Assembly (NCBI RefSeq): GCF_030028105.1
Contig: NC_092372.1
Span: 128,883,492-128,947,491 of the forward strand
Length of the DNA stretch: 64,000 nucleotides
Direction of reading: 5' to 3'
Origin: Mobula birostris
Lineage: Eukaryota
Shown piece by piece: positions 15,424 to 62,063 of the stretch. Numbering within the stretch: the first letter of the stretch is position 1; each line of letters starts with the position of its first letter. The translations under genes and the position numbers were made by a program. Below the pieces are notes generated by a model, which made no database searches, had not been told where the DNA came from, and saw nothing but the letters and a program-made list of their open reading frames with translations.

Positions 15424-15467
15424 CTTGTTATTATGGGTAGCCATGAGACTGAGTACATTGCAGTTAG

Positions 15468-15692
15468 CACAAGGAAATCTGCAGGTGCTGGAATTTCAAG
15501 CAACACACACAAAAATTGCTGGTGAACACAGCAGACCAGGCAGCACCTATAGGAAGAGGTACAGTCGACCTTTTGGGCCGAGACCCTTCATCAGGACTAA
15601 CTGAAAGAAGAGATAGTAAGATCTCTTACTATGTAACTCTTCCTATAGATGCTGCCTGGCCTGCTGCATTCACCAGTAATTTTTATGTGTGT
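15468..15692. mobile_element. Fold-back Penelope pseudo-LTR mini-element
   Basis: 14-bp TSD TACATTGCAGTTAG (15454-15467 / 15693-15706); inverted pLTR copies; minus-strand hammerhead TAGTC-CTGATGA-AGGGTCTCGGCCC-AAAAGGTC-GACTG at ~15562-15600. Confidence 0.85.
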
Positions 15693-17464
15693 TACATTGC
15701 AGTTAGTGCTTGTTGGTATAGACTGGAATCTTAATTAGAAATGCTGCTTTGGCTTTTGTCGAAATCCCTAGAGTCGAGAGTTAATTAAGAGTCAAGGCTA
15801 TATTGTCTGGAGAAGGCAAGGGATTGTCTGCACCAGGTGTGCCACGCCTCACTGAGAAATGAGAAAGTATTTAACCTGAGATTAGATGTTGATGGAAATG
15901 TATTTATTCTCCATTAATGATGCAGAGGTATTGGCTTGTATTGCTGTTGTTGTTTTGTTGCTGTTGTCCTATTGTTGTTGCTTGTGTGTTCTGCGAGCTT
16001 GGTAGGTATGCTACATTGGCATTGGAGTGTGTGTGGACACTTGTGGGCTCCTCCCAGCACATCCTTAGGCTATGTTACTTGTTACCACAAACAGCATGCT
16101 TCACTGTATGTTTTGATTTACCTGTGATAAATAAATGAATCTGAATATCTGAAATTAAAGTCACTTACTGGGTGAAATTGAGAAATGGTATTACATACCT
16201 TTGGTATAGTAGTTACTCATTTGCTTCCACAAGCGAGAGCAACTTATCTCTATAACTGAAGGTGCAAAATACAGGACAAAAATGACAATTACGCAGATAA
16301 ATAAAATAGTAATGAGATTCAATGCTTTCACATGGATGGGGATCAGTGATGAGATGAGCTGGCATATAGATGATGAAGTTCAATGTTGATAACCACAAGG
16401 CGTGGCATTAAAAACAGGGAAGAGCAAAAGCCTGCACAATGCAATTACTAATAGTGTTTGATGAGGAAAAGGCTGGACATATTTAAAGAGCATCTGGACA
16501 GAGTGAAGCAGTTATTAATCAGACAAATTGAGTACAGATGGACATCTTGTGAATTGAGTCACAAATCAGAACTAGTTATATTAAACATTGTTAAGGCCCA
16601 GAATAGACTATAGCAAGGAATTTCTGTCAGCTAATTTTAGTATATTAATAGAATTGGCAAAATTAAACTAAAAGTCTGAAAGGAAACATGATTTAGATCT
16701 TTACATTACAGCTCAAGAAAACATTTTATTTTCCCCTTGACACTTTTCATAATTTCTCATGTTATGGGAAGCTGTACAGCTCATCTCGGGGAAAAGCCAC
16801 TCAGTCACGGGAAGAACTCTGCAATTCTGCAGCTTAGGGGGTCAGGATCGAACTTGGGTCTCTGGAGTGATGTACCATCCTGTAGTTGACTATGAAACTG
16901 GGGGCCATAAAGGAAAACAAGCACCAATAATTCAGATGGGTCATTCAGGAAGCTCCATTTATTATCTGTAGAGGGTTCAGAATGTTGAGCTGATGATGAA
17001 AAAGTGCAGTTGAGAGCAGCAAAGGTACATTTAATTGGAAACAAATTAAGTATGTGAGAAAGAGATAAAAAGAAAAGTGGAAAAACATGAGAAGAGATTT
17101 GATGTAACATTAATGGCTGCATGGACCTGTTAGAATGAAGAGCCCGTTCCTGTGTTGTAGACATTTTACAAGGTTCACCATGGGGATAACAGTAAATATT
17201 ATCAGCAGAAAATAACAAGATAAAGGACTGGAAAAACAGTATTTGGAGATAGTCACAGACAAGGAAGCTAATTCCAAAGACAATTTCAAATTTATTCTGT
17301 ATCAATCGAAACCTTCACTCATAAAAGAAGAGGAAGGGACAGAAACCTTCAGTCATCACGGTGCAGACATGGACACATTCCATAGTTAACATGATGAGTG
17401 GGGTGAAGAGTTTCACTCCTCAGTTTTACATTACAGGGAGCATCAGTGAAATTACACCCTACAG

Positions 17465-19235: not shown

Positions 19236-19963
19236 CAAAATGAACATTGATCAAGCACGAGAAAATGGGCAGAAGCTGGGAATCCAAGCAACACACACAA
19301 AATGCTGGGGGGACTCAGCAGGCCAGGCATTAACCAAGAGTCAGTTCACAAAGACAATGAAGCCTTTTATCTGATTTTAAATCCAGGGGTATTGTAACAT
19401 GAATTTGAACAATGGGAGAGAGGAAAGCTGGATATATTGGCAGCTACATGCTGTTCCTTAGGGCAACATCTCATGTAATTTGGCCTAAGATCAAAATAAA
19501 ATGCAAGATATACCCAGCAGGTTATCTGTGGACAGAGACCCAAGCTTCAAACTGTGTCCATGTGGTATGACGGAGACCACCTTGTTAATCACCTGGACTA
19601 TGTACTCTTATGCAAAAGAACATGTCTTCTATGGTTACTGTTCAGCAAGCTGCACAGTCATTCTCACCCCAATCCCAGTACTGAAGCATTCATTCTGTAA
19701 GCAACAATGCTTGCTGGTATCCGGAAGAAAACATTAATGAGTGTACATCTCTGTAAGGGTTGGCTGCCAGGATTATAGCTGCAATTGTAAGGTCTGGTAG
19801 TTGTGATATCTAGCATCAGATCAACACCTGATTTAACTGGCAAGGGATGATCCAATGAAGCCATACCAGGAAATTGACAATGGATGATCTGAATTGTTGT
19901 AAGATTTTCATGCACAGGATTAGGGGCACCGAATGTAAAATGCAGAAAGTTTTTGTATTTTTT

Positions 19964-20080
19964 TGGATCTCAGCAGGTCGGTCTGACTGACCGTTTCCAC
20001 TGATGCTGCCCGACCTGCTGAGTTCCTCCGGCATGTTGTGAGTGTTGCTTTGACCCCAGCATTTGCAGAGTATTTTGTGT
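19964..20080 (+). mobile_element. Penelope pseudo-LTR mini-element with short 5' inversion
   Basis: Inverted CTCAGCAGGTCGG, then GACTGACCGTTTCCAC..GATGCTGCCCGACCTGCTGAG; flanked by TTTTGTATTTTTT repeats. Confidence 0.75.
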
Positions 20081-20309
20081 TTTGTATTTTTTTGAGTGCT
20101 TTGCACAATTAAGCTTGGGGAAAAGCTCCTGTCTCTCTCTCCCTCTATCAAAATTTTCCTACCATTCCAAGAAATGCGTTGCGTTTGCCCTTCCCATAGG
20201 ACTGGACTCATACACAAGGCTCTGCCACTGAGGTTGGAGTTGGCTTTGATCAGCATGGTCTTAATGAGAGGCGAGTGGGTTATCCAGAACTTGTCATTGG
20301 AAGTAGGTC

Positions 20310-20445
20310 TGAAAACACGGGATTCTACAGATGCTGGAAATCCAGAGTAATACACACAAAATGCCTTCATCAGGGTCTCAGCCCTGAACATCAGCTGTTT
20401 ATCCCCTACTATGGATGCTGCCCGACCTGCTGAGTTCCTCCAGCA
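20310..20445. mobile_element. Fold-back Penelope pseudo-LTR fragments
   Basis: Inverted pLTR part (GATGCTGGAAATCCAG..ACACACAAAATG) followed by direct GATGCTGCCCGACCTGCTGAGTTCCTCCAGCA. Confidence 0.7.
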
Positions 20446-21369
20446 AATGTTTCTGGAGATTTGCGCTGGACCAAGTTCTGGACATCAGCTCAGTTTCTCT
20501 CTTCACTGTCCACACTGCTGTTGGTATTCAGCATCTTCTGTATGTTTACAGTCTACCACCCTCTGTAGCATTACACTTCTGTGTTAATATAATCTGAATG
20601 ATACTCTGTGCAAATGACCTTAATAAACATTCAACAGTTTTCACACTACGTTTTGAATTTATTAATAAATTGACACGGCCATACTTTTTGCTTACACACA
20701 GTAACAAAAGGTACTCCTAGACTAAGCACTTCCAGGCAGTCACTTGGTTAATGCAGCCGAACACTTAAATAGGATGGAACTGCATTGTGATTTCATATTT
20801 CTATAGAACCTGAAAAATGTCCTTTTAATAGAAATACCACAATAAACTGCTTGAAATTTCAGCCTCATGTTCTCTGACATCATGTGATCCATTTTGATGA
20901 TATTATATCTTTCTAAGTTGATTACTATTCCACATTAATTTTGCAAGACTTTTGATCCTATTAGCATTACACTATTGAAATAAAAACGTTAGCTGTGGCA
21001 AGTCCTAATCTCACTGCCTTTTTAAGCCAAACTGATTTCTATGCATAAGAATGTTGTATTCACAGCAATCTCAGTATGTTATGGTTTTATGCAGCCTTCA
21101 CACGTTCATCACAATCTTATAAATCCCATTTCCTGAGGTCATCCCTATCTGGTGACCTGTGAAACAAAACAGAAATTAAGCTTCAGTTTGTGATGGCAGC
21201 CCTTCACGAGTCACAAATGTTTTGTTATAAGAAGGAAAACAATGCTATTCAAATGATTCTGAACAGGGAATTACATAAATACATCTTCCCCCAGGTGTAT
21301 TATCTTTTGCAGCTCACAGGCAGATTACACCCTTCAAACTGAACAAGCTAGAGCTCGAATTATCAAAAG

Positions 21370-21930
21370 CAGAACTTCCCGATGGCCAAACACTTTAATT
21401 CCCATTCCCATTCCCTTTCCGACATGTTGGTCCTTGGCCTCCTCTTGTGCCAAGATGAGTTCACCCTCAGAGGTGAACTAAACCTAACTAAGGTGCACCT
21501 TATATTCCATCTGGGTGGCCTCCAACCTGATGGCATTAATATCGATATCTCTTTCCAGTAAGAAAATTTCTCTCCCCTTCCCCTCTTCTGTTCCCCACTC
21601 TGGCCTCTTACTTCTTCTCATCTACCTATCACTTCTCCTTCTGTCCCTCTTCCTCCCTTTCTCCCATGGTCCATTCTCCTCTCCTATCAGATGCCTTCAT
21701 CTCCAGCCCTTTACCCTTCCCATCCAGCTGGCTTCACCTATCACCTTCCAGCTATCCTCCCACCTTCTATTTTGGCATCTTCCCCCTTCCTTTCCAATCC
21801 TGAAGAGAGGTCAGGGCCCAAAATGCAGACGCTTTATTCACTCCATAGATGATGCCTGAACCTGCCGATTTCCTCCAGCATTTTATGTCTGTTGCTCTGG
21901 AATTCCAGCATCTGAAGACGTTCTTGTGTT
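21370..21930 (+). mobile_element. Penelope-like element 3' end (GIY-YIG tail plus pseudo-LTR)
   Basis: HFNSHSHSLSDM.VLGL and LIFHLGGLQPDGINID motifs, pyrimidine-rich UTR, degenerate hammerhead CTGAAGA at ~21800. Confidence 0.8.
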
Positions 21931-39240: not shown

Positions 39241-40959
39241 TATTGTGTCTAATGGTCTATTGTGCACAATCTTCATTTACTTATAGTTGGTATAGATTGT
39301 GGAGTTCAACAAAAAAATTACCAACCTTAGGAGTGGGAGGAGCTAAATATGGTGCCAGCGGTTTTTGCGGACCTGGGTGGCTTCTTCCAGATTGGCCAGA
39401 AAACAGTTTAATTCCCCTCTTCTCGTGTTTCTTCTTTTCATTTTCAAGGTGGGTGGGGTCTTGTTGGAGTCCATGATCCACAGCTGTGCTCAGGTTACCA
39501 TTCCCCACAGGCGGTGGTTCTCACTCTCGGAACTCACCGAACAGCCTGGCGTTTTGATATCTCCAGGTGCAGCCGTGAAGATGTGCAACTTCGGGGTGGA
39601 TGACTCAATTCCGCGCCGCTGTCGCTGACTGAAGAATCACGGGAGATTGAAACATCAGGACAGCAGGCGGTGAGTGCAGTTGTTGGATGCTCCTGTACTT
39701 CAGTGATCTCTCTCTCTCTCACTGGTGAGTGGGAGTCTGTTAATCTTCAAGTCAGTGACTCGGACTTGACCTGAAGCTGCAGACTGTAACATCAAAACAG
39801 CCAGTTGTTGGCTTTCCCGCTCGCTGTAGCAGGAACGATAACTCCCTCTCCCTCCTTCATTAGTGAGAGAGAGAGTCTGTCTGAGATGCTGAAGTGTTGG
39901 GATGTACATTAGTTTTTGATGGGCTGTAGATCATGGTCTCCAGGCACTTTGCTATTGCCTGCATGGTGGGTGGTGGGAAGAGTGGTTAATGCTTTTGCTG
40001 GATTAAGTGGGAGGATGGAGGGGGAGAGTTGATGCTTTTGCTGCTGCGTGTGTTTGGGATGGTTCTAACATTTTCATTCTTTGGGGATTTTTTGCTCTGT
40101 TTCACGGATGTCTGTGAAGAGTAAGGATTTCAGGTTGTACGGTATACTGCATCCATTCCCTGATGTGGAATGGAACCATTGAGCCTCGTTCCCTATGATG
40201 GCACGTCTGTCAAATGAGAAGGTGGGCTTGCAGCTGCATTTCAGATGGTAGAACAATCAGGTGACCAGATGAGACACACAAATTTTTAGCACTCAGGATG
40301 TTGCCCACAGCTGTTGCAAAGGGTTGTGAAGCTTCATTCAAAGCAGAAAGTGAGAGAAATTTTTTGGATATTGCAAGATTATGGGGACGGTGTAAGAAAT
40401 TTGAACTGAAACAGAAGTTCTGTCATGATCTTACTGACTGACAGTTCAGGCTTGATGGGTTAAAATTTTACCTATAGAGTCAGAATTATTAATCAGTGCA
40501 GCATGGTCATTGGCCCTTCAGTCCAATAAGTCACTGCCAGCCAAGATGTCTATCTAAACTACTCCTGCTCCTATTTTGATGTTCTTGAGTTTTCTCCTTT
40601 TTTTTAATGCCCATTTATTTCAAGATTTATTCCAGGATGAATACCATGCAACCAGTTCTAGTGAGCTGATTGATTGCGGGAGTAACAATAAAATTATTTA
40701 GTCTGCATGTTTTGATTGCCTCTGGAGTGCTAAACGGAGCCATGTTTCTAACACACTCATTGCCATTACTTCCTTAATGGAATTCATGAAGGGTCTATTT
40801 GGTCTTCCACAGAAGTATTTTCTGTTTTTATTTCGGATTTCACCATCAACATTATTTTTTATGTTGATTACTTCCTTCTCTAGTTTCTGTATTAGCACCA
40901 AAATAAACATTTGGCATGAAACTGGCGAGTGTAAGTGTTTAGGAGCTCTTTCACATCTT

Positions 40960-41570
40960 AATCCAGACAAATGTGAGGTCATGAATTTTGGTAAGTTAAA
41001 GAGTGACAGGGCATATGCACCAAATGGTAGGACACTAAGGAATGTTGCTGAACAGTAGGGCTTTGGGGTCCAGGTTCATAGCTTGGTGAAAGTGACACCA
41101 CAGATGGATAGAGTAAAGAAGAAAGCATATGGTATTAATGCCTTCATAATTTGGGGCACAGAATATAAGAGATGGAATTTTACGAAACACTAGTTAGGCC
41201 ACACTTGGGGTGTTATATGTAGCTCTGGTCACCACTCGGTGGGAAGGATGTGAATGCACTGGAGAAAGTGAATTCACCAGAATGTTGCCACTTATGTGGA
41301 GAAAGTGATCAAGGTGGGCTTGTTTTCCTATAAATAAGGGAAATAGATGGAAGCACATAAGAGTGAAAGGCATAGATAGTCAAATTCCATTTTCCATGGT
41401 AAAGGTGCCAAAAGCAAGAGAGTGTAATTATACAGTGAAAGGAATGAATTTTAGAAGCAATTTTGAAGTGATTTTTTAAAAACTATATGAAGCAGTTGAT
41501 TTCTAGCATGCACTACCCAAGAAAGTGATAAAATCTGATACAGTCACCTATTTCAAAGGCAATTAGACTG
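40960..41570 (+). mobile_element. Old CR1 3' fragment
   Basis: NPDKCEVMNFG, LVRPHLG..WSP. Confidence 0.7.
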
Positions 41571-41911
41571 ACTCTAAAAAATAGTATTAAAGTAAATGGT
41601 CCTAACTAATGAGATTAGTATAGCTGAGCAAAAAGTCAGCATTAATGTGTTGGGCTATAAGGCTCAGCTCTGTGTTGTACAACCCTTTGACTGTGATAAA
41701 AGAGCTCACGCTATCATGCTGTACATCGTTGATGACGTCCCACTTGTAACCATGGAGTTCAACCAGACTAGGAGGGAAAGAAAACTCATTCCTAAGTGGA
41801 GTATAACAAAAAAAACAGGAATTCTGCGGATGCTGGAAATTCAAGCAACACACATCAAAGTTGCTGGTGAACGCAGCAGGCCAGACAGCATCTCTAGGAA
41901 GAGGTACAGTC

Positions 41912-42464
41912 GCCTCTTGCTCCCACCACGAATCCAAAGTACTCCACTGTCTCTGCACCTGTAAGCTCTATTATGTGGCGTGTGAGATGTTCATACTTTT
42001 CCTCCTTCTCCTTCCACGCCTTTTCTAGGGACAGATGGTTGTCCTCATATCTGATGGTCACGTCGACTATGGCCGCTTTCCCTCTCCTAACAAAGATCAG
42101 GTCCGACTTCTATAGCGATCCGTCCTCTGCTCTTATGTGAGGTTCGACGTACGCATCCCATCCAAGCTTACAGGCTTTGTCTTTCAATCTTTCAGCCACC
42201 TTGTTATGCCTCTTAATCCAGCTCCTTTTCACCTCCATGCATCTCCCGGAGTGTGGGCCAGGGTCTCATTGGCCACACCACATCTCCTACAAGTTTTCAC
42301 TCGATCTTTATCCCCTTTATTCCTTGTACACCGTGTTGGATACTGTCCACATCTTAGCAGCAAAGCATCCACTATCTGGTAGCCCTTCCAGCCTTTGTGG
42401 TTTTTCAGCCACCAATTAGATGGCTCATTATTCCTGAAGTCTCTGATTCCGGATCCCTGTATAG
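41912..42464 (-). pseudogene. R2 retrotransposon fragment (CCHC zinc knuckle plus restriction-like endonuclease)
   Basis: QGSGIRDFRNNEPSNWW..ALLLRCGQYPTR..CRRCGVANETLAH(frameshift)SGRC..IKRHNKV..EPHIR..*KSDLIFV..AIVDVTIRYE..EKEEKYEHL..FGFVVGARG. Confidence 0.9.
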
Positions 42465-43240
42465 TACGTGACTCCCTTGTCCATTCCTCCCCACCATCCC
42501 TGCCCAATGATCTCCCTCCTAGCACTTACCCTTGTAAGCGGAACAAGTGCTACACATGCCCTTACACTTCTTCCCTTACCACCATTCAGGGCCCCAGACG
42601 GTCCTTCCAGGTGAGGCGACAGTCCTTCACCTGTCAGTCAGCTGGGGTGATATACTGCGTCCGGTGCTCCCGATGTGGCCTTCTATATATTGGCGAGACC
42701 CAACGCAGACTGGGAGACCACTTTGCTGAACACCTACGCTCTGTCTGCCAGAGAAAGCAGGATCTACTGGTGACCACACATTTTAATTCCACATCCCATT
42801 CCTATTCTTACATGTCTATCCACGGCCTCCTCTACAGTAAAGGTGAAACCACACTCAGGTTGGAGGAACAACACCTTATATTCTGTCTGGGTAGCCTCCA
42901 ACCTGATGGCATGAATATTGACTTCTCTAACTTCCGCTAATGCCCCACCTCCCCCTCGTACCCCATCCGTTATTTATTTTTATACACACATTCCTTTTCT
43001 CACTTTCCTTTTTCTCCCTCTGTCCCTCTGACTTATACCCCTTGCCCATCCTCTGGGTTCCTCCCCCTTTCCCCTTTTCCTTCTCCCTGGGCCTCCTGTC
43101 CCATGATCCTCTCATATCCCCTTTGCCAATCACCTGTCCAGCTCTTGGCTCCATCCCTCCCCCTCCTGTCTTCTCCTATCATTTTAGATCTCCCCCCTCC
43201 CCCTCCCACTTTCAAACCTCTTACTAACTCTTCCTTCAGT

Positions 43241-43278
43241 TAGTCCTGACGAAGGGTCTCCGCCTGAAACGTCGACTG
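43241..43278 (+). ncRNA. Minimal type I hammerhead ribozyme in the PLE pseudo-LTR, core intact
   Basis: Stem I TAGTC/GACTG, core CTGACGA (43246-52), short stem II, GAAAC-GTC; predicted cleavage after 43273. Confidence 0.85.
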
Positions 43279-46200
43279 TACATCTTCCTGGAGATGCTGC
43301 CAGGCCTGCTGTGTTCACCAGCAACTTTGATGCGTGTTGCTGGAGTATAATAAAACAGCTTCAGCCAGAAGAACCTTCACTCTTCCTCCAGATGTTTGTG
43401 CAGATGATATGGAATAGGATGACTGGACACACTTTCAGCCAAAGAACCCCAAGTGGATACAATGGTCATTGTAGTTAGAACATCAGTCATCCTTCCACCT
43501 TTGACAGCATTCCTTTTGTAGTCTCTTGGGGTCATCTTCAGAAGTCCTTCTGCAGTTCAGATTCTTTTTCATCCAGTAAGAAGCTCCTTTGAACAAATGT
43601 TTACTCACTTATCCTAGTAATTCCTTCTTTGGCTTGCTACAGTCCCTTCTATTCACCCCAGAATACTACATATGGGTGCTCTGTCAAACCATTGTGACAT
43701 ACCCTGCAGGTGAGGCACCAAATTTAGAGACTTCAGGATTCATTTCAATGGAGCCAAGGCAAGGTGACAAGCTAGTTATGGAAAACTGCTGAAATCAGGC
43801 CATTTCTAGCCCAGTGCTCTCCTGTTTGTTTGTTGCTCCAGATTCCATTATCTGTGGTTTCTTGTATCTCCAAAATCAATTTGTATCTTGAAGTGAAAAG
43901 CAAGCTGCTGCAGGAAGTCAGACAGGTCAATGTGGGAATGGGAAGAGGAGTTAAAATGGTGGAAAGTCACAGAGAGTGGTCCCTGCAGAAAGCAGAAGGG
44001 AGTTTGGGAGAGAAGATGGGATCAGCGGTGGGATCCTTTGTACCTGGCAGGAATGAAGGATGATGCACTCACTATATGCTAGTAAGGCAGAAGGTGAAAG
44101 AAACAACTTGTGTTTTCTATTGTGTCTCTATTTGTATCTTCTTGGCAGGAATCCAAGTGCATTAGAATGAATATCACATTATTGCCAAGTTCTGCAGTAC
44201 AGTCCAGAGTTAATAAGCTTTTCTGCAAAAGAGCTCTTTCTACAGCCACATTTTACCAATATCTTCCCAAGTGCATTGCAATGACTTTTCTTTAAGTCCT
44301 TATAATCTACAAATCTTATTTTTATTTACCAATGTTCTTAAAATACCTTTAAAGTTCTCCATTGTAAGTATGAATGCCATTGATTCCATCACTAACTGAA
44401 TTGGCCTGTTTAAAAATGCATGTGAATGCAGCTTTTGAATGACTGGGAATAAATCCAACTGTGGCAGAAAGTGATACCTTGCTTACAGAAAGTTTGATGT
44501 ACAAGCACTGATATTTTGCTCATTGAACAAGCAACTGGAGAGAAATGTGGAAATCTGCTAAATCATATTGATAAGAGAGAGACAAGGAGCAGCCTATTCT
44601 CTACAGCAATTTCTGCGTGAAAATATTATGTCCTGCAGAGAAAAGAAAAGCCATTCCTATTTGCTCGGTACATTCTACATACATTGTCAGAATTAGAAAT
44701 GGAAAATTTAAGATCATATTATATGCCGTTGATTTGAACTAACTCTTTGATTCCCATTCATCAAGTGGCATTACCATTACTTTGGCCACCATTCTTTAAA
44801 ATCTTAATGTCCTCCTACCAAAAATAAAGTACAAAGTCATCCACTTTTGACTGGCAAAAAGAATAGTTCAAATTATTTACAAAATGGTCAAAGTTGAGAG
44901 AGAGAGAGAGGTTTTCCCTTTAACAGACTATGATCTATTTTCTTTGCTTGTTGATATCACAGATACTTACATGTTTCATATTAATCTATCAGTTGTATTG
45001 TATCATACTGCTCTGTTTTGTATTCTACTAGCTCGATTGTACCTGTCCTTATGTTTCATGTTTACACTTATCTAGTCCAAACCTCATGTTTCTATCTTTT
45101 GAAAATAGTTCTACTACTTGAATTATTTGCTCTAGCTTTGCTGATGAGGGACTGTATAATTTCAAATAGCCTCATTATTATTATCATTATTTGTTTTTTA
45201 TTAAGTTGCACAGTTTGTCTTTTATACATTGGTTGTTTGTCAGTCTTCCTGTGTACATTGATTCTATTGTATTTCTTGGTTCTACTCTGAATATCTGCAA
45301 GAAAATGAATCTCGGTAGTATATGGTGACATACACATACTTTAATAAATTTATTTGAACTTGTTCAACCCTGTGTTATCACTGAAACTTTCCTTTACAGC
45401 TAAACATTTTGTGCAATATCCACCAGCAAAAATTTCCTTCTGATAAAGGCAAGTCTGAAAACTTCTCTTCAGCAATGCCACTACAAACTCTGCTCTCAGC
45501 CATACTCTACACATGAAAAGTGACTAAAAGCAAACCAATTTGCTTGCAACCTTGCCATCAGACTTATTTCAACGTTAAGCATCAGACAAGATATCCACAC
45601 CAACGCTACCTCTATAACATCAGCAACACTGCTCCCGCTTCAGTTCAATCGCAGTCCGAAACCTCCATCCATGTCTTTGTCCCACAGACTGTCTCTGGGT
45701 TATAAACACCCAGTTTAGTGGCACCCGCGTATGAACCAGCTCCATTAAATTACTATGAAAATTGAATGTATGACATACAGACACAAAATGCTTCCGATGA
45801 ACTTCAGGATGAGTTTCCTTTCGCCCTCCAATTTAAGTAATGTTCTTTCTTAATATTTCAATTCTTCCTGATGCCATTAATTGCAATACATTGGAGGCAT
45901 GATTAAAATAGATTGATTTTATGTATTTTCCTATTTACGACCAAGGACATCTATAAAAATGGAACATGTGCATTACTCAAGGTCAACATATATTTTGACT
46001 ATTTCAGTGCACTCAAACAGTTTCCTTTGTTCCTCTTTTCCATTTTCCTGCAGCCATCCACTACCTTGCACGAATGCACCTGCTGGTCCAATTTGGCTCC
46101 CAGTTAAGTAATAACAGGACTCTTTGTTTTCACACTCCTTCCTTTCAAACTTCAGTTGTACCTGATCAGATCTGTACTAAGGCCCGATGTGCCAATGTGG

Positions 46201-48339: not shown

Positions 48340-49062
48340 CGGATATGAGAGGGGAAAGGGGATGGGGAATGGGGATGGGGGCACTACCAGAAGTTCGAGA
48401 GATCAATACTCATATACCGTATCCTTGCTCCTGGTGTGGCCTCCTGTATATCGCTGAGACCCGAAATAGATCGAGGGACTCCTTCACTGAGCACCTATGG
48501 TCCGTCTTCCAGAAAAAGCAGAATATCTCAGTGGCCACCCATTTTAGTTCCACTTCCCATTCCCATTCTAATATGTCCATCCATGGCCTTTTCTGTCATG
48601 ATGAGGCCACAGGTTGGAGGAACAACACCTTATATTTTGTCTGTGTAGCCTCCAACCTGATGGTATGAACATCAATTTCTCAAACGTCTGTAATCTGCTA
48701 CCCCTACACCATTCCCCACCCCCTTTACCCTCACTTACTTTATCACCTTGCCTGCCCATCACCTTCCTCTAATGTTCCTGTCCCTTTTCTTTCTTCCATG
48801 GCGTTCTGTCCTCTTCTTCAGACTCCCTCTCTCCAGCCCTGTATCTCTTTCACAAATCAACTTCCCAGCTCTTTACTTCATCCCTTACCCTTCAGGTTTC
48901 ACCAAACAACTTGTCTTTCTCTCTCCCCTCCCCCACCTTTAAAGTCTACTCCTCTTCTTTTTCTCTCCAGTCCTGCTGAAGGGTCTTGGCCTGAAACATT
49001 GACAGTACTCTTTTCCATGGGTGCTGCCTGGCCTGCTGAGTTCCTCCGGCATTTTGTGTGTG
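48340..49062 (+). mobile_element. Penelope-like 3' end with 5' inversion and mutated hammerhead
   Basis: CSWCGLLYIAET..EHL..VATHF; inverted GIY-YIG tail at ~48340-48410; CAGTC-CTGCTGA..GAAACATT at ~48968-49000. Confidence 0.85.
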
Positions 49063-51879
49063 TTACTCTCCTTTTAAATTCTTCATTGAAGTGAAAATTT
49101 TAACACACCTTACATTGCTTCGTCACTCAAATTTTTCATCATTTTGGAAACTCACAAGTGAAAAAAAACACCACTTTCTTCACAGTGTGTCAGTTGGGTC
49201 TCAGAATATTTTAATGTGTTTCCATAGAAACCTTCAGGAGAAATATTGCACTCAATTATTTTCAACACCAGCAATTGCAGTCTCTTTCCAGAGACAGGAA
49301 ATGTCGTATATTAACTGGAAGGTGGCGCCAGGAGTGCTAATGCAGATCCTAATAAATCTGATGTCCAGGTAATAGTCAGGAATAGATAGTAGATAAACTC
49401 AAGTAAAATCTGAAAAATACTATTTAAGTTTGGTGAAGGTCTTTTATCTTGGTATGTCAACATTGTCTCTCTTTCCACAGATGCGGCTTGACCTAATGAA
49501 TCCTTCCAGTATTTTCTGTTCTTATGTTATAGCTGCCAGGAGAAGTGGAGGAGGCAGATAGAATTACATTGTCTGAAAGGTTAGGAAAGGCTTATAAGAA
49601 TTTGGGCCTTATGTGTGTAATGGGAATAGTTATGTCAATTGCCTGACGAGATGGTGAAACAGCCTGCTCTGTGCTGCATGATTATGTAATAACCTTTTCT
49701 GTGCTTAAACAAGGATTGCCTTTTAACTTGGTTGCTAGTAGCATAGCTTGGTGTGTTCAGGGAGAGGAAGAAGCTCTGGTGAAGGGACTTGTCATGCCCA
49801 TTCTGGGGCAGCTCTCTCACCTTTTGTCCCCACCGGATGCTCAGCTCCAAGCCGCAGTCTGCATTCGACAGCAGCCATACCCCAATACACTGCTTCGGCA
49901 GGTAGGCTAAACCAGGTGAAGGGTAGCTGGCAGCCTCACACCACAGTGAGATAGGTACATGCAAAGTCAACTCCAGTGCACTGAGCAGACAAGATCTACA
50001 GAGAGATCCAACAGCTAGAACAGCAGTACTGTAACACTCCATGGAGAATGAAAGGCATGACAAGGCTCAATGGATGTCATAGTCATCCACTGCAACACAG
50101 GAAGATCCTAACTTTGTGATGCTTGTTTGTGCGGCTGGACCCAGACTTCTGAAGTTGAGAGAGTGGAACTGCCCCAGTGCAATACCGTCTCCACTTTAAA
50201 AACTCTCCTGCATAGGTTTCTTGTCATCATTGGACACAGTTGGATTTTGGAAATCCTTTGTGTTTTCAAAATCGTTTTTTAATTTGAAGGTGTTTTAGAA
50301 AACCTCTGAGTTTTGAAAGTGTTTTAAGAAATTTGTTTTATTCAAGAGGGTGGAGAAACAGGAGACTAGCAGGGGAGTGTTGGAGAAATTGGGGAAAGTG
50401 TATAAGGGGAGATTGGGTAGGCTTGGTTTATTTTCACTGGAGTAAAGGAGGCCGAGAGGTGACGTGATAGAGGTGTGCCTAACGAGCCTGACAGCTCCCT
50501 TACAGTCATACAGCTTTTGCCACTTAGTGACATCACATACATGTGATATTTTTACAGATGCCTTGCTGATGGAATACACAAATCTTGCACTGTTCATAGA
50601 TCAGCTATTTGATGTACTAAGTGGTAATAGCAATCGGGTCTGCAAACCTCCTTGAACTAAATAACTTAGCCAGTGTTGGCTAGTTTGATACAGGCCAATT
50701 AACATAACCCCATTGCCTTACTTTGTGGTGAGCCAGAAATATGTGTTCTATAGACAGTGCTGTTTGTTTGCTAATCTATCCTTTTAGTTTCAGACTGACT
50801 ATTGCGGTTACATTAAGGACTTTGCCCAAGGGTGACCTGCAGGCTAGCAGAGGAATGGAACGGCTCATACATATTTTGGTAGTGACATATCTACACCCCA
50901 CTACCCATGGGATTGGTGTGGATTAGTAAAAGGGTTGGCATGTGTGCTCTAGAGCTGTATGTCAAATCATCCCGATGTCTTAAAAATGGGTGTGTGATTG
51001 ATCAATGCGTATTGCTGTCATGCTCACAGCATTGAAATAGAGGGAGTGCAGCTTGCACCAATCAAATTGTTCGTTAGTTTAGCACATTGGAAAGGGGTGC
51101 AATTTCAAGGGTGGCTAACATAATTTAAAATGAAACTGTGCTTCTTAAACTATGACTCCGGCTGGTCCTGCCGGGCATTCTGGAGCACAGCCTGACCCAG
51201 CAGACCTCCAGGCATGATGTAGCTCATGACCCAGTGTATTCATTGTTTTCCTAAGCTTCTTTGGAGGCTTTAAGAGGAAGCTTTGCAATATAGGAAAGGT
51301 CTGCAAGGTAGGAAAGCGTGTATCAAACCTGGAGTCTCTGGTGTGTTGTCTTCATGTTGAGGCTTCCACACAAAGTTCTTTGCTACATAAAACATCATCT
51401 CTATATTCTTTACCAATATTGTAAAATTCCAGCTTGCAACCTGTAATCATTGAATCATAGAAAAATCCAGCAGAAGATAATCAGCAAATAAGCTGGAATG
51501 TTGCCTTCAAGTATCGATGGTGATGAAAGCATGGTGGACTGTGCAAAGTTTACAGACTGCTTCACCTGAAACATTGAACTCCAGTTTGCAAGTGTTGTCA
51601 TTTAACCAGCATTGCATGCTGACTATTGGTATTTCCCCTCTACCCACTCATCATCAGCAGCTCTGCCATTAGAATTGTTTCAATATTCAGGTTCCTGGTC
51701 ATCATTTTCCACAGGACCTCATGTGGGAGAACCATGTCTCCTTCATCGACAAAAAGGCTCTGCAGAGGATCTACTTCTTGCAGCAATTAGTAATATTCCA
51801 TCTTCACCAGAACATACTGGTGTAGTTCTACACTGCCATCTTTCAAAGCTTCCTCACATCAACACCACTGTTTGTTGTG

Positions 51880-52512
51880 CTCCTGGTGAGACCCAACGTA
51901 GATTATGAGATCCCTTCTCTGAACACCTATGTTCCGTCTGCCAGAAAAGGCAGGATCTCCCAGTGCCTACCCATTTTAATTCCACTTCCCATTCCCATTC
52001 CAACATATCAGTCCATGGCCTCCTCTACTGCTGAGATGAGGCCACAGTCAGGCTGGAGGAGCAGCACCTTATATTCCATCCAGCTAGCCTCCAACCCAAT
52101 GGCATGAGCACCAATTTCTTGAAGATCTAGTAATGCCCCCCCATCACCATTCTCCATTCCCTTCTCCCTCTCTCACCTTATCTCCTTACCTTCCCATCAC
52201 CTCCCTCTGGTGCTTCACTCCCTTCTCTTTCTTCCATGACCATTTGTCTTCTCCCATCAGATTCCCCCTTTCTCCAGCCCTGTTTCTCTTTTACCAATTA
52301 ACTTCCCAGCTGTTTACTTCTCCCCTCCTCCTGTCTCGATGACACCTATCACCTTGTATTTCTTCCTCTCCTCCTCCTCCCTCCCCCACCTTCTTATCCT
52401 GACTCCTCATCTTTTTTTTTCTCCAGTTCTGATGAAGAGCTCAAGACATCAACTGTATTCTTTTTCATAGATGCTGCCTGGCCTGCTGAGTTGTTCCAGC
52501 ATTTTGTGTGTG
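51880..52512 (+). mobile_element. Penelope-like 3' end nested in an old Rex1-type fragment (~51620-53070)
   Basis: GETQRRL..EHL..HFNS..QPNGM; CTGATGA relic at ~52428; flanks give KKALQRIYFLQQL and ITVWFG. Confidence 0.8.
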
Positions 52513-59104: not shown

Positions 59105-62063
59105 GGAAGGTGAGCAGGAGGTAGATAGGAGCTAAAAGGAGTTAGTCACCCCAAGGCTGCAGGAGTTAGATAAGTGGGTGATTGTCAGGGAAGGGATGGG
59201 AAGAGCTCAGATAGTAGAGAACACCCCTGTGACCATCCCCCTCAGGAATCGTTACCTTGTTTTGGATGCTGTTGAGAGGGTGATCTGAGAGGGGACGACC
59301 ACTGCGATCAGGTCTCTGGCACAGAGCCTGGTTCCATGGTGCAGAAGGGAGAGAAGAAGATGAGAAATGTGGTAGTCATAGGGGATTCCACTATGAGAGG
59401 AACAGACAGGAGATTCTGTCAGCCTGATAGAGATACTGCATGGTGTGTTGCCTCCCAGGTGCCAGGGTATGGGATGTCTCGGATTGGGTGCAGAGTATTC
59501 TGAAGGGAGAGGGTCAACAGCCAGAGTTTTGGTACACGTTGGTACTAATGACATAGGGAGAAAAAGGGAGGAGGTCCTGAAGAGAGAATTCAGGGAGTTG
59601 GGTAGGAAGCTGAAAAGCAGGACCTCCAGGGTAATAATCTCAGGATTGTTGCCTGTGCCACATGCTAATGAACACAAGAATAGCATTATCAGGCATATTA
59701 ATGCGTGGCTGAGAGACTGATGTAGGGGACAGGGCTTTGAGTTCCTGGATCACTGGGGTCTCTTCTGGCAGAGGTATGACCTATACGAGAAGGGCGGTTT
59801 ACATCTGAACCCAAAGGGGTCCAATATCCGAGCAGGCAGCTTTAATAGAGCTCTTAGGGAGGGATTAAACTAATTTGGCAGTGGGATGGGAACCGGAATG
59901 ATAGGGTTGATGAAGGGGAAAACAGAAGTAAATCAAAGATAATGTGCAACAGAGATGATAGAAAGGACAGGCAGGAGATGAGGCATAATCAGAACTGGTG
60001 GGATGAGTTACAGGGCAATAGAGGCGTGGTGCAGTTAAAACAGAAAGCAACAAATACTGGACAGAAAGTCCTGACGAAGGGTCTCGGCCTGAAACGTTGA
60101 CTGCACCTCTTCCTAGAGATGCTGCCTGGCCTGCTGCGTTCACCAGCAACTTTTATGTGTGTTGCTGGACAGAAAGCGTTGCATTTGAAATTCAGTTACA
60201 GATTGGCAAGTATGATTTTGTGGCCATCTCTGAAACTTGGCTGAAGGATGGCTGCCATTGGGAGTTGAATGTCCAAGGATATACAGTGTATCAGAAAGAT
60301 GGGTTAGGAGGCAGAGGAGGTGGTGTGGCCCTGTGTATAAAAAATAATATTAAATCATTAGGAAGGAATGACATAGGATTGGAAGGTGTAGAGTCTCTAT
60401 GGATTGAGTTAAGAAATGGAAAGGGTAAAAGGACCCGAATGGCAGTTGTATGCAGGCCGCCAAACAGCAGCCGGGATGAAGATTACAATTACAGCAAGAG
60501 ATAGAAAAGGCATGTCAGAAAGGTAATGACATGATAATTGTTGGGGATTTTAACATGAAAGTGGATTGGGAAAACCAGGCCAGTACTGGACCTCAAGAGA
60601 GAGAATTTGTAGAATGTCCAAGGGATGGCTTTTTAGAACAGCTTTTTGTTGAGCCCACTAGGGGATCGGCTGTGCTGGATTGGGTGTTGTGCAATGATCT
60701 GGAGGTGATAAAAGAGCTTAACGTTAAGGAACCCTTAGGGAACAGTGGTCACAATATGATCAAATTCACTTTGAAATTTGAGAAGGAGAAACTAAATTCC
60801 AATGTGTCAGTATTCCAATGGAATAAAGGAAATTACAATGACATGAGAGGGGAACTGACCAAGGTTGAATGGAAAGGGACACTAGCAGGAAGGTCAGCAG
60901 AATGGCAATGGCTGGAGTTTCTGCGAAAATGAGGGAAGTGCAAGGCAGATATATTCCAAATAAGAAAAAAATTTCGAATGGAAGATGAACACTACTGTGG
61001 CTGACAAGTGGAATCAGAGTCAAAGTAAAAGCAAAAGAGGGGGCATACAAGGAAGCCAAAGCTTGTGGGAAGATAGAGGATTGGGGAGATATTAAAAACT
61101 TGCAGATGGAAACTAAAAAGGTCATTAGGAAGGAAAAGATGAATGATAAAAGGAAGCTGGTGACTAATATCAAAGAACATACTAAAAGCTTTTTTTAAGT
61201 ATATAAAGAGTAAAAGAGAGTTGAGGGTAGATATAGGACCAATAGAAAATAATGCTGGAGGTATTGTAATGAAAGACACAGAGGTGGCAGAGGAGCTGAA
61301 TGTATTTTGCATCAGTCTTCATGGTGGAAGACATCTGTAGTATACCAGACATTCAAGAGTGTCAGGGAAGTAAATTATGTGCAGTGAAAACTACAATTGA
61401 GAAGGTGCTCAGGAAGCTTAATGGTCTGAGGGTGGATAAATCTCCTGGACCTGATGGAATGCACCCTTTGGTTCTGAAGGAGGTAGCTGGAGAGATTGCA
61501 GAGACATTAACAATGATCTTTCAAGAATTGATAGATTCTGGCATTGTACCGGATGATTGAAAAATTGCAACTGTTACTCTGCTATTTAAGAAGGGTGGGA
61601 GGCAGCAGAAAGGAAACTATAGACCTGTTACCCCGACATCAGTGGTTGGGAAGTTGTTGGAATCGATTATTACGGATGAGATAATGGAATACCTGCAGGC
61701 ACATGACAAGATAGGCCAAAGCCAGCATGGTTTCTTGAAAGAAAAATTCTGCCTGACTAACATACTGCAATTTTTTGAGGAGATTACAAACAGGGTAGAC
61801 AAAGGAAATGCAGTAGATGTGGTGTACTTGGACATAGAGAAGGCTTTTGATAAGATGCCACACATGAGGCTGTTTAGCAAGATAAGAGCCCATGGAATTA
61901 CAGGGGAGTTACTAGCATGGGTGGACCATTGGCTGACCAGCAGAAAACAGAGAGTGGGAATAAAGGGATCCTATTCTGACTGGCCACCGGTTACCAGTGG
62001 AGTTCCTCAGGGGTCGGTGTTGGGACCGCTGCTTTTTACAATGTATGTCAATGATTTGGACTA
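59105..62063 (+). mobile_element. CR1 LINE (ORF1 esterase, APE, RT), decayed
   Basis: [80 protein letters not shown]. Confidence 0.93.
60067..60164 (+). mobile_element. ~96-bp hammerhead-bearing PLE mini-insert in the CR1 endonuclease region
   Basis: 12-bp TSD CTGGACAGAAAG (60057-68 / 60165-76); AGTC-CTGACGA-AGGGTCTCGGCCT-GAAAC-GTT-GACT. Confidence 0.88.

What the first reader, a model, noticed from the sequence alone, without database searches (positions are those of the whole stretch)
41797..43350. Penelope insertion that captured an R2 endonuclease fragment exactly at its hammerhead cleavage site
Seen: one 10-bp TSD (TGGAGTATAA) encloses inverted pLTR + 553 bp of R2 coding sequence + GIY-YIG end + direct pLTR with an intact hammerhead. 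On the minus strand the R2 frame ends ...GCA AGA GGC (GARG) and continues directly into GACTGTACC. In the intact ribozyme at 43266-43281 (GAAAC-GTC^GACTGTAC) this is the first nucleotide of the predicted 3' cleavage product, with 1 nt (C) of ambiguity. Known: PLE pLTRs carry minimal hammerheads that leave a 5'-OH, and R2 normally sits only in 28S rDNA. Inference: the PLE RT ran off the ribozyme-cut 5' end and jumped onto R2 RNA, or the 5'-OH RNA was ligated (RtcB-type) to an R2 RNA fragment. Either would be a ribozyme-defined route for capturing foreign RNA into the genome. The insert holds two unrelated endonuclease domains back to back.
Basis: partly seen in the sequence, partly recalled or inferred. 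Interest (0 to 1): 0.92.

Follow-up and report, generated by a model that had tools for sequence, protein, structure and literature searches.

The report
Penelope insertion carrying an R2 fragment
One old jumping-gene (Penelope-like) insertion picked up a 553-base piece of another jumping gene (R2), and the join lies within one base of where the Penelope RNA's hammerhead ribozyme should cut itself, which hints, but does not prove, that the ribozyme works in living cells.

Summary
A 10-bp target duplication (41797-41806 / 43341-43350) encloses four parts:
- an inverted pLTR end (41807-41912, minus sense, with the long "tail");
- 553 bp of R2 coding sequence (41913-42465, minus sense);
- a 5'-truncated Penelope-like element (about 42467-43340: GIY-YIG end, UTR);
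- within that element, a pLTR with a minimal hammerhead motif (43246-43273).

The inverted arm stops matching other pLTR copies at the predicted scissile bond (43273|43274), with 1 nt of ambiguity.

Apart from the R2 cargo, this is the textbook complex PLE insertion: an inverted truncated copy, and the tail at one end only. The R2 piece is colinear with solved R2 proteins. It lacks the last ~52-54 codons and has no target duplication of its own. In a related organism its locus-specific variant sits at single-copy depth.

Best reading: one PLE event primed on both target strands, with a template switch from pLTR RNA onto R2 RNA (about 0.8).

That the switch point was set by ribozyme cleavage is only about 0.4. 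A second arm in the window also breaks at the site. However, both breaks may lie at -1, and the sample is only 11 broken arms. RT stalling or chance are not excluded.

First-stage notes on other pieces of this genome report similar junctions and another Penelope-R2 chimera. I could not check them.

It is a new variant of known template-switch chimeras.

The parts
41797..41806 (.). left copy of the target-site duplication (TGGAGTATAA)
   Evidence: (D3)
41807..41912 (-). Inverted (minus-sense) pLTR end. It runs from the distal, 'long tail' end at 41807 to the base that pairs with C17 of the hammerhead at 41912, and carries no ribozyme core.
   Evidence: (I1). The extra ~35 nt beyond the point where the right arm ends matches the long tails of the copies at 15470, 5950, 1719 and 19980.
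41913..42465 (-). R2 coding fragment: the CCHC knuckle and most of the restriction-like endonuclease. It ends at ..GARG, 52-54 codons before the ORF end, and has one frameshift near 42251 and one stop.
   Evidence: Limits come from laid contigs: X9 record 25 starts at 41913, X20 record 9 ends at 42465.
42466..42469 (.). Head-to-head join of the two cDNA-derived halves. The 4 nt ACGT are palindromic and could belong to either side; CGT may already be the PLE Arg codon.
42467..42940 (+). 5'-truncated PLE ORF end: Cys-rich linker plus GIY-YIG endonuclease, including the stop codon. No RT part is present.
42941..43245 (+). C/T-rich 3' UTR, the upstream part of the pLTR
   Evidence: (matches copies at 48842-49067 and 52380-52512)
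43246..43273 (+). Minimal type-I hammerhead motif (CUGACGA, helix II, GAAAC, GUC). The predicted scissile bond lies between 43273 and 43274. The 5' strand of helix I is AGUC at 43242-43245; its partner GACU is at 43274-43277.
   Evidence: The motif is as described in PMC4209133. It is not found by Rfam.
43274..43340 (+). pLTR downstream of the predicted cut, ending at the proximal (short) end GTGTTGC
   Evidence: The short end is shared with the copies at 60165 and 49064.
43341..43350 (.). right copy of the target-site duplication

Best explanation
One retrotransposition event by a Penelope-like element (PLE), primed on both strands of an AT-rich target, made the whole 1.5-kb insert.

1. The bottom-strand nick primed cDNA synthesis at the proximal start site of a PLE RNA. 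Synthesis ran through an uncut pLTR, the UTR and the GIY-YIG codons, and stopped at about 42467.
2. The top-strand nick primed at the distal start site (the long tail) of a second pLTR RNA and copied 105-106 nt.
3. That template ended at the hammerhead scissile bond because the ribozyme had cut it. The reverse transcriptase ran off the 5'-OH end and continued on an R2 messenger RNA for 553 nt.
4. The 3' ends of the two cDNAs then met head to head at 42465-42469 and were filled in, leaving one target duplication.

Shown: the anatomy, the TSD, the identity and sense of all parts, and the position of the break. Inferred: priming on both strands, the template switch (about 0.8 together), and that the RNA end was made by the ribozyme. 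With that last step the full statement stands at about 0.4.
For: - Single TSD: 10/10, or 14/15 when extended.
- The arm structure and the tail at one end only match published PLE anatomy (PMC8557442, passages).
- They also match the in-vitro finding that a PLE protein cuts and extends both strands and starts reverse transcription at two adjacent internal sites that delimit the tail (PMC11167929, Main text).
- The R2 piece is sense-colinear with the arm, is internal to the R2 ORF, and has no TSD of its own.
- An R2-family contig of run X9 stops aligning exactly at 41913 with 21 further unlike letters. That R2 variant therefore has no microhomology of 2 nt or more that could have drawn the switch to this point.
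- Break at offset 0.
- A second arm, 19966-20079, with its own 15-bp TSD, breaks at -1/0. It is followed by 2-3 filler bases and a 13-nt snap-back copy, as expected when an RT runs off an RNA end.
- A third join (15629) can be read as a break at +3/+4.
- The locus-specific R2 variant has depth 11.4-12.5 in X1 against flank depth 11-14, so this is a single copy and not an amplified composite.
Against: - Only 2 of 11 broken arms in the window sit at the site, or 3 counting +3/+4. Leaving the index case out, P is 0.17 for one case and 0.05 for two, and the windows were chosen post hoc.
- In both site cases the base at -1 equals H17 of the family (C here, T at 19966-20079). The X9 R2 contig does not match at 41912. 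The template may therefore have included C17, which a cut RNA would not.
- No loose-end cluster at 43273/43274 is among the 24 of 4003 rows shown. Recurrent head-to-head joints elsewhere have the minus arm ending at -3, not 0.
- Published work found low in-vitro activity for such minimal hammerheads (PMC4209133). For the anole element it found no RNA-seq reads ending at the site, and insertion in vitro did not need cleavage (PMC11167929).
- Rfam does not recognise the motif.
Confidence: 0.4

Rival explanations
1. The same single PLE event and the same template switch onto R2 RNA, but the ribozyme did not make the switch point. The RT paused or fell off at the folded, possibly dimeric and protein-bound, hammerhead core of an uncut RNA, or the position is chance.
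For: - The base at -1 matches H17 in both site cases. This is what a stop at the foot of the trans helix III would leave.
- Other copies show recurrent ends at -3 (41912 plus 'AC' joined to 43239, 43243 and 43256).
- Breaks also cluster at the 5' foot of helix I: offsets -31 to -37 (about -30 to -35 once target-duplication bases are set aside), in 3 of 11 arms.
- The statistics are weak.
- The scan read over 1,000 windows of a genome in which this repeat has very high depth, so a striking coincidence was likely to be found somewhere.
Against: - A 4-bp helix is a weak block for an RT.
- Both site cases continue with a new template, which is typical of run-off at an end.
- The break is at the same place in two different subfamilies.
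Confidence: 0.35
2. The chimera already existed as RNA before reverse transcription. Either a 5'-OH hammerhead product was ligated (RtcB-type) to an R2 RNA fragment that ended in a cyclic phosphate, or a read-through transcript came from an R2 copy that had earlier been hit by a PLE mini-insertion. Ordinary priming on the tail then copied it.
For: - The join is clean, with at most 1 nt of ambiguity and no filler.
- The R2 part ends inside the ORF, as an RNA breakage product would.
- A first-stage note reports another Penelope-R2 chimera on another piece of this genome (s1-894708, unchecked).
Against: - Nothing here tells ligation from jumping.
- No second copy of this junction was seen: the window-specific R2 letters are at single-copy depth in X1.
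- The read-through version still needs an earlier break at the same site.
Confidence: 0.15
3. Nested, independent insertions: an R2 fragment that was already there or came later, with separate PLE pieces on either side.
For: PLE copies are extremely dense in this genome: 15 arms in 64 kb.
Against: - One TSD encloses the whole unit.
- No direct repeat of 5 nt or more flanks the R2 piece.
- R2 copies made by R2 itself keep their 3' end and sit in 28S rDNA (recalled; abstracts). This piece lacks the last 52-54 codons and the 3' UTR, and no rRNA match lies in 41000-44200.
- The left arm alone has no second TSD.
Confidence: 0.04
4. Assembly artefact: a false join between a very high-copy pLTR and a moderately repeated R2 sequence.
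For: - No contig bridging 41912/41913 was among the rows shown.
- Published work warns that complex PLE structures trouble assemblies (PMC8557442).
Against: - The unit is bounded by a matching TSD in unique flanks.
- A window-like R2 contig at single-copy depth exists in X1 (record 4, 3 of 190 letters differ).
- A 190-nt contig identical to the window exists in X9 (record 26).
- The right junction with its flank is present in X5 (record 24, 1 of 137 letters differs).
Confidence: 0.03

Closest known systems
Complex PLE insertions with an adjacent inverted 5'-truncated copy and a 30-40 bp 'tail' at one end (Craig et al. 2021, PMC8557442; Frangieh et al. 2024, PMC11167929)
   Same: - Outward-facing arms inside one TSD.
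- The long tail on one arm only.
- An AT-rich target.
- A 5'-truncated ORF ending in GIY-YIG.
- A minimal hammerhead in the pLTR.
   Different: Foreign RNA-derived sequence (R2) lies between the arms. The inverted arm stops at the ribozyme's predicted scissile bond.
Template-switch chimeric retrocopies made by LINE reverse transcriptases, such as U6/L1 chimeras and the Magnaporthe bi- and tripartite chimeras (PMC2104539; bioRxiv 10.1101/2025.02.02.635956; listings and abstract starts only)
   Same: - A bipartite insert in one sense orientation within a single TSD.
- The 3' part is the RT's own template.
- The 5' part is another cellular or TE RNA fused directly to it.
   Different: - The enzyme here would be a PLE RT (telomerase-like, GIY-YIG), not a LINE RT.
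- The chimera forms the inverted arm of a two-ended insertion.
- The donor part is only about 105 nt long.
Ribozyme-defined 5' ends of retrotransposon RNAs: the HDV-like ribozyme of R2 (PMC3774820, PMC3414825) and twister variants in Schistosoma non-LTR elements (PMC8501958); abstract starts only
   Same: [quoted passage not shown]
   Different: - In those cases the ribozyme sits at the element's 5' end and trims a co-transcript.
- Here the ribozyme lies near the 3' end, so cleavage would leave a roughly 100-nt tail RNA.
- That short RNA would be a template which invites jumps to foreign RNA.
L1 twin priming inversions (recalled, not looked up)
   Same: Both target strands prime cDNA synthesis, and the two cDNAs are joined head to head inside one TSD.
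   Different: In twin priming both halves come from one L1 RNA. Here the second half switches to an unrelated RNA.

Membership tests
Penelope-like element (EN+ PLE) insertion | C-terminal GIY-YIG endonuclease preceded by a Cys-rich linker | tested here: met
   Pfam PF01541 at E 0.0075, 17 bits, below the 22.6 cutoff. 31 homologues at E<=1e-10, one of them carrying PF01541. Alignment.
Penelope-like element (EN+ PLE) insertion | telomerase-like reverse transcriptase domain | tested here: not met
   This copy is 5'-truncated at about 42467. Only the last ~157 codons are present, so it is a truncated copy and not an autonomous element.
Penelope-like element (EN+ PLE) insertion | pLTR with a hammerhead motif; inverted truncated copy; tail at one end; TSD | tested here: met
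   Features as listed in PMC8557442.
R2 (restriction-like-endonuclease non-LTR element) | colinear homology to the R2 protein CCHC knuckle and RLE domain | tested here: met
   The three pieces hit 9nl2_A at 885-956, 956-996 and 1002-1067, and also 9nl3 and 9dou (R2Tg). The PDB holds no other RLE clades, so finer clade placement was not tested.
R2 (restriction-like-endonuclease non-LTR element) | site-specific insertion in 28S rDNA with an intact 3' end | tested here: not met
   The flanks are PLE sequence. No rRNA match lies in 41000-44200. The piece ends 52-54 codons before the ORF end. It is R2-derived sequence, not an R2 insertion.
Hammerhead ribozyme (minimal type I, PLE type) | conserved core CUGANGA ... 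GAAA ... N-U-H, with helices I and II | tested here: met
   Motif match at 43246-43273: 3 matches in the window against 0.07 expected. Helix I (AGUC/GACU) and a 4-bp helix II were read. The form without helix III is described in PMC4209133.
Hammerhead ribozyme (minimal type I, PLE type) | match to curated covariance models, or a predicted fold | tested here: not met
   No Rfam hammerhead family at E<=10. The free-energy fold of the monomer and of the dimer is a different structure.
Hammerhead ribozyme (minimal type I, PLE type) | self-cleavage after H17 | not testable with these tools
   Needs an in-vitro or in-vivo assay. Published minimal PLE hammerheads cleave weakly, as dimers or with protein.
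Template-switch chimeric retrocopy | two RNA-derived parts of the same sense, fused directly inside one TSD, with the RT's own template at the 3' side | tested here: met

The most novel reading that the evidence does not exclude
PLE minimal hammerheads do cut in vivo. The ~100-nt 5'-OH tail RNA they release is a competent template for target-primed reverse transcription. Because it is so short, the RT regularly runs off it and jumps (or the RNA is ligated) onto other RNAs. The ribozyme would then define a general route by which PLE-rich genomes capture foreign RNA, such as R2, and build the snap-back or palindromic mini-insertions seen here.
Probability: 0.3. Interest if true: 0.75.

Novelty: new variant of a known kind. 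Interest (0 to 1): 0.45.

Why it matters
The role of the hammerheads conserved in PLE pLTRs has stayed open since they were described. [quoted passage not shown] The 2024 in-vitro study found that cleavage was not needed for insertion and saw no RNA ends at the site (PMC11167929).

DNA junctions that sit at the scissile bond would be a fossil record of cut templates. Any PLE-rich assembly could be mined for them.

This locus alone proves little. It does show that a PLE event can carry RNA from another retrotransposon to a new place, which explains R2 coding sequence outside rDNA. It also gives a concrete, cheap genome-wide test.

Tried and rejected
**Searches that led nowhere**
- Rfam at a permissive threshold found no hammerhead.
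- Free-energy folding of the monomer and the dimer did not give the hammerhead fold. It is uninformative for a ribozyme that needs a dimer or protein.
- To enlarge the sample of pLTR junctions I scanned metagenome contigs with a pLTR motif. The 119 loci were all chance matches: none had a hammerhead or a tail nearby.
- A scan of viral contigs gave 0 hits.
- A scan of bacterial and archaeal genome contigs gave 18 loci, all chance matches.
- The protein search with the GIY-YIG end returned only 31 gene models from one source, without contigs, so no further PLE loci could be fetched.
- The search of earlier findings by sequence was blank.

**Readings I rejected**
- *The 43242 loose ends as a truncation hot spot.* The hot spot is large (445, 408 and 363 contigs in X1, X5 and X20). 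But the loose-letter consensus equals the UTR of another subfamily, the copy at 21759. It is mainly a homology boundary.
- *An amplified chimeric family.* The window-specific R2 letters are at single-copy depth in X1.
- *Nested insertion and misassembly.* See the rivals.

**Limits of what I saw**
- I did not test R2 clade placement beyond the PDB hits.
- I could not see the empty site. One search shows flank depth in X20 but no listed joint across the insert among the 15 of 855 joints shown.
- Supplements were closed. Those of PMC4209133 (alignments of minimal hammerheads) and PMC11167929 (Fig. S2, genomic and RNA ends) may bear on the exact cut site and on known end distributions.
- Searches found no paper describing a PLE-R2 chimera or PLE junctions at the hammerhead site. 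The library lacks most subscription journals.
Full report
**What is there**

- The decamer TGGAGTATAA stands at 41797-41806 and 43341-43350. It extends to 15 nt with one mismatch. A gapped reading up to about 18 nt is possible.
- Inside it, 41841-41912 and 43273-43344 are inverted repeats of 72 nt, 90% complementary.
- The left arm is minus-sense. It runs about 35 nt further out (41807-41840) than the right arm. This extra part matches the long ends of other copies in the window.
- The right arm is continuous leftwards with a C/T-rich UTR and the end of an ORF (42395-42940).
- That ORF end aligns from the DSLVHSS codons (42470, perhaps from 42467) with PLE-type GIY-YIG proteins. The Pfam GIY-YIG hit is weak: E 0.0075, below the cutoff.

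**The R2 piece**

On the minus strand, 41913-42465 reads as three pieces separated by one frameshift (near 42251) and one stop.
- Searched apart, they hit the same solved R2 proteins colinearly. In 9nl2_A they cover 885-956 (E 6e-10), 956-996 (E 9e-5) and 1002-1067 of 1121 (E 4e-13). They also hit 9nl3 and R2Tg 9dou, up to residue 1338 of 1390.
- The piece is therefore the CCHC knuckle plus most of the restriction-like endonuclease. It ends 52-54 codons before the ORF end.
- It is not an R2 3' end. No rRNA lies nearby, and no direct repeat of 5 nt or more flanks it.

**Evidence from public runs (all Logan contigs, likeness 80 or more)**
- *Depth.* Flank depth in X1 is 11-14. The PLE parts reach 10^5 to 5x10^6 in all four organisms laid. 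The R2 part reaches about 150-235 in X1.
- *Main R2 family.* The main R2-family contig (record 1, depth 101) differs from the window at 29 of 361 letters.
- *Copy number.* Where every other copy differs from the window (41975, 41992, 42070, 42087, 42106), the window's letter has depth 11.4-12.5 in X1. Record 4 (42023-42212, 3 differences) has depth 11.5. That is one copy, not an amplified chimera.
- *Limits of the piece.* R2-family contigs stop aligning at 41913 (X9 record 25, with 21 further unlike letters) and at 42460-42465 (X1 record 5, X20 record 9). PLE contigs align from 42470/42471 (X5 record 19, X9 record 27).
- *Other organisms.* X5, another organism, has a 1577-nt contig covering 43314-43450 with one difference, so the right junction is shared. 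X9 has a 190-nt contig identical to the window (42117-42306).
- *The frameshift.* X1 has an extra A behind 42251 in all its contigs. The frameshift therefore arose after capture in the window's lineage.
- *Gaps.* No listed contig bridges 41912/41913. X5 shows none of the window-specific R2 letters.

**The hammerhead**
- Rfam finds nothing at E<=10, and the free-energy fold is not a hammerhead.
- The sequence at 43246-43273 fits the minimal PLE hammerhead of Cervera and De la Pena: the conserved core with no helix III, thought to act as a dimer (PMC4209133; part 1 of the text and passages).
- The descriptor CTGANGA-N11-15-GAAANRTH matches 3 times in the window against 0.07 expected.
- Local alignment of the left arm to the closest other copy starts at offset 0 from that bond. 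The C at -1 is shared between the R2 Gly codon and C17.

**What is ordinary**

Published PLE anatomy includes an inverted 5'-truncated copy next to the main copy, and a 30-40 bp tail at one end only (PMC8557442, passages).

In vitro, an anole PLE protein cuts and extends both strands. It starts reverse transcription at two adjacent internal sites that delimit the tail (PMC11167929, Main text).

The two arms here, one with the long end and one with the short end, inside one TSD at an AT-rich site, are exactly that. Only the R2 cargo and the position of the break are unusual.

**How it most likely arose**

The top-strand cDNA carries antisense tail followed directly by antisense R2. This is the signature of continuous synthesis across two RNA templates. 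Its 3' end meets the 3' end of the bottom-strand cDNA (the truncated PLE) at 42465-42469, around a palindromic ACGT. I put about 0.8 on this single-event, two-primer, template-switch model. Nested insertions and misassembly are unlikely, for the reasons given under the rivals.

**Is the switch point made by the ribozyme?**

I censused all pLTR arms in the window.
- There are 15 arms. Four run on into ORF remnants and 11 are broken.
- Break points relative to the bond are: -55; +3/+4 (or -55); -35; -31; about -31; -21; about -17; -1/0; 0/-1 (the index case); +17; and +47.
- The second site case, 19966-20079, has its own 15-bp TSD. It continues with 2-3 filler bases and a 13-nt snap-back copy of its own sequence. 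That is again a template switch.

This is suggestive, but the numbers are weak. With the index case left out, P is 0.17 for one arm within 3 nt and 0.05 for two within 6 nt, and the windows were chosen post hoc.

Several results count against the ribozyme reading.
- In both site cases the base at -1 equals the family's H17, and the X9 R2 contig does not match at 41912. The template may therefore have included H17, which fits a stall at the foot of helix III.
- Among the rows shown there is no loose-end cluster at 43273/43274. Only 24 of 4003 loose-end rows were shown.
- The recurrent head-to-head joints shown there have the minus arm ending at -3.
- The large 43242 cluster is mostly subfamily divergence of the UTR. 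Its loose consensus equals the copy at 21759.
- The literature reports weak or protein-assisted cleavage and no RNA ends at the site.

I therefore give the full ribozyme-run-off reading about 0.4, stalling or chance about 0.35, and a pre-formed chimeric RNA (ligation or read-through) about 0.15.

**Earlier notes of this scan (unchecked AI notes)**

Other pieces of this genome are said to hold PLE mini-insertions whose junctions cluster at stem I and at the cleavage site. They are also said to hold two single cases at the site and another Penelope-R2 chimera with ribozyme-bearing arms. My in-window census shows the same two clusters. I could not test the rest.

**Comparison and novelty**
- Template-switch chimeras are well known for LINE enzymes (listings and abstract starts only).
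- Ribozyme-defined 5' ends are known for R2 and for some Schistosoma elements (abstract starts only).
- Searches found no report of a PLE-made chimera with R2, or of PLE junctions at the hammerhead site.

I rate this a new variant of a known kind, of moderate interest. The locus is a single old event, with arms 10% diverged and shared by at least two organisms. Its value is as a pointer to a cheap genome-wide test of whether PLE hammerheads cut in vivo.

Noticed in passing
window 19951-20094: A PLE mini-insertion of 114 bp (19966-20079) inside a 15-bp TSD. Its pLTR part starts at -1/0 of the predicted hammerhead cut. It is preceded by 2-3 filler bases and a 13-nt inverted copy of its own downstream sequence (a snap-back).
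   Followed up: yes
window 15455-15717: A head-to-head pair of pLTR arms inside a 13-14 bp TSD. The minus arm keeps a hammerhead with a mutated GAAA box. The arms meet at a 9-nt inverted repeat about 55 nt upstream of the cut. The plus arm lacks the whole ribozyme, either by deletion or by a break at +3/+4.
   Followed up: partly
window 60055-60177: A solo pLTR end of about 96 bp with a strict hammerhead core and a 12-bp TSD (CTGGACAGAAAG). It sits inside what looks like the 5' part of a CR1/L2-type LINE, with an esterase-like ORF1 upstream and an AP-endonuclease start downstream. The LINE reading is recalled from motifs and was not tested.
   Followed up: partly
window 20312-20451: Head-to-head arms in which the plus arm starts inside the hammerhead. 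It is preceded by a 9-nt inversion of the CTGATGAAG box.
   Followed up: no
window 42251 and 42220, 42292: All contigs of run X1 have an extra A behind 42251 and G at 42220 and 42292, whereas a contig of run X9 is identical to the window. The frameshift is thus specific to the window's lineage, and X9's organism is probably the window's species.
   Followed up: partly
window 39629-39656: A third match to the minimal hammerhead descriptor, outside any recognised pLTR copy. It is probably chance.
   Followed up: no
window 43242: Hundreds of contigs in three organisms diverge from this copy just upstream of the hammerhead. Their loose consensus equals the UTR of another PLE subfamily (the copy at 21759). 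The ribozyme and tail are thus shared by subfamilies with different UTRs.
   Followed up: partly
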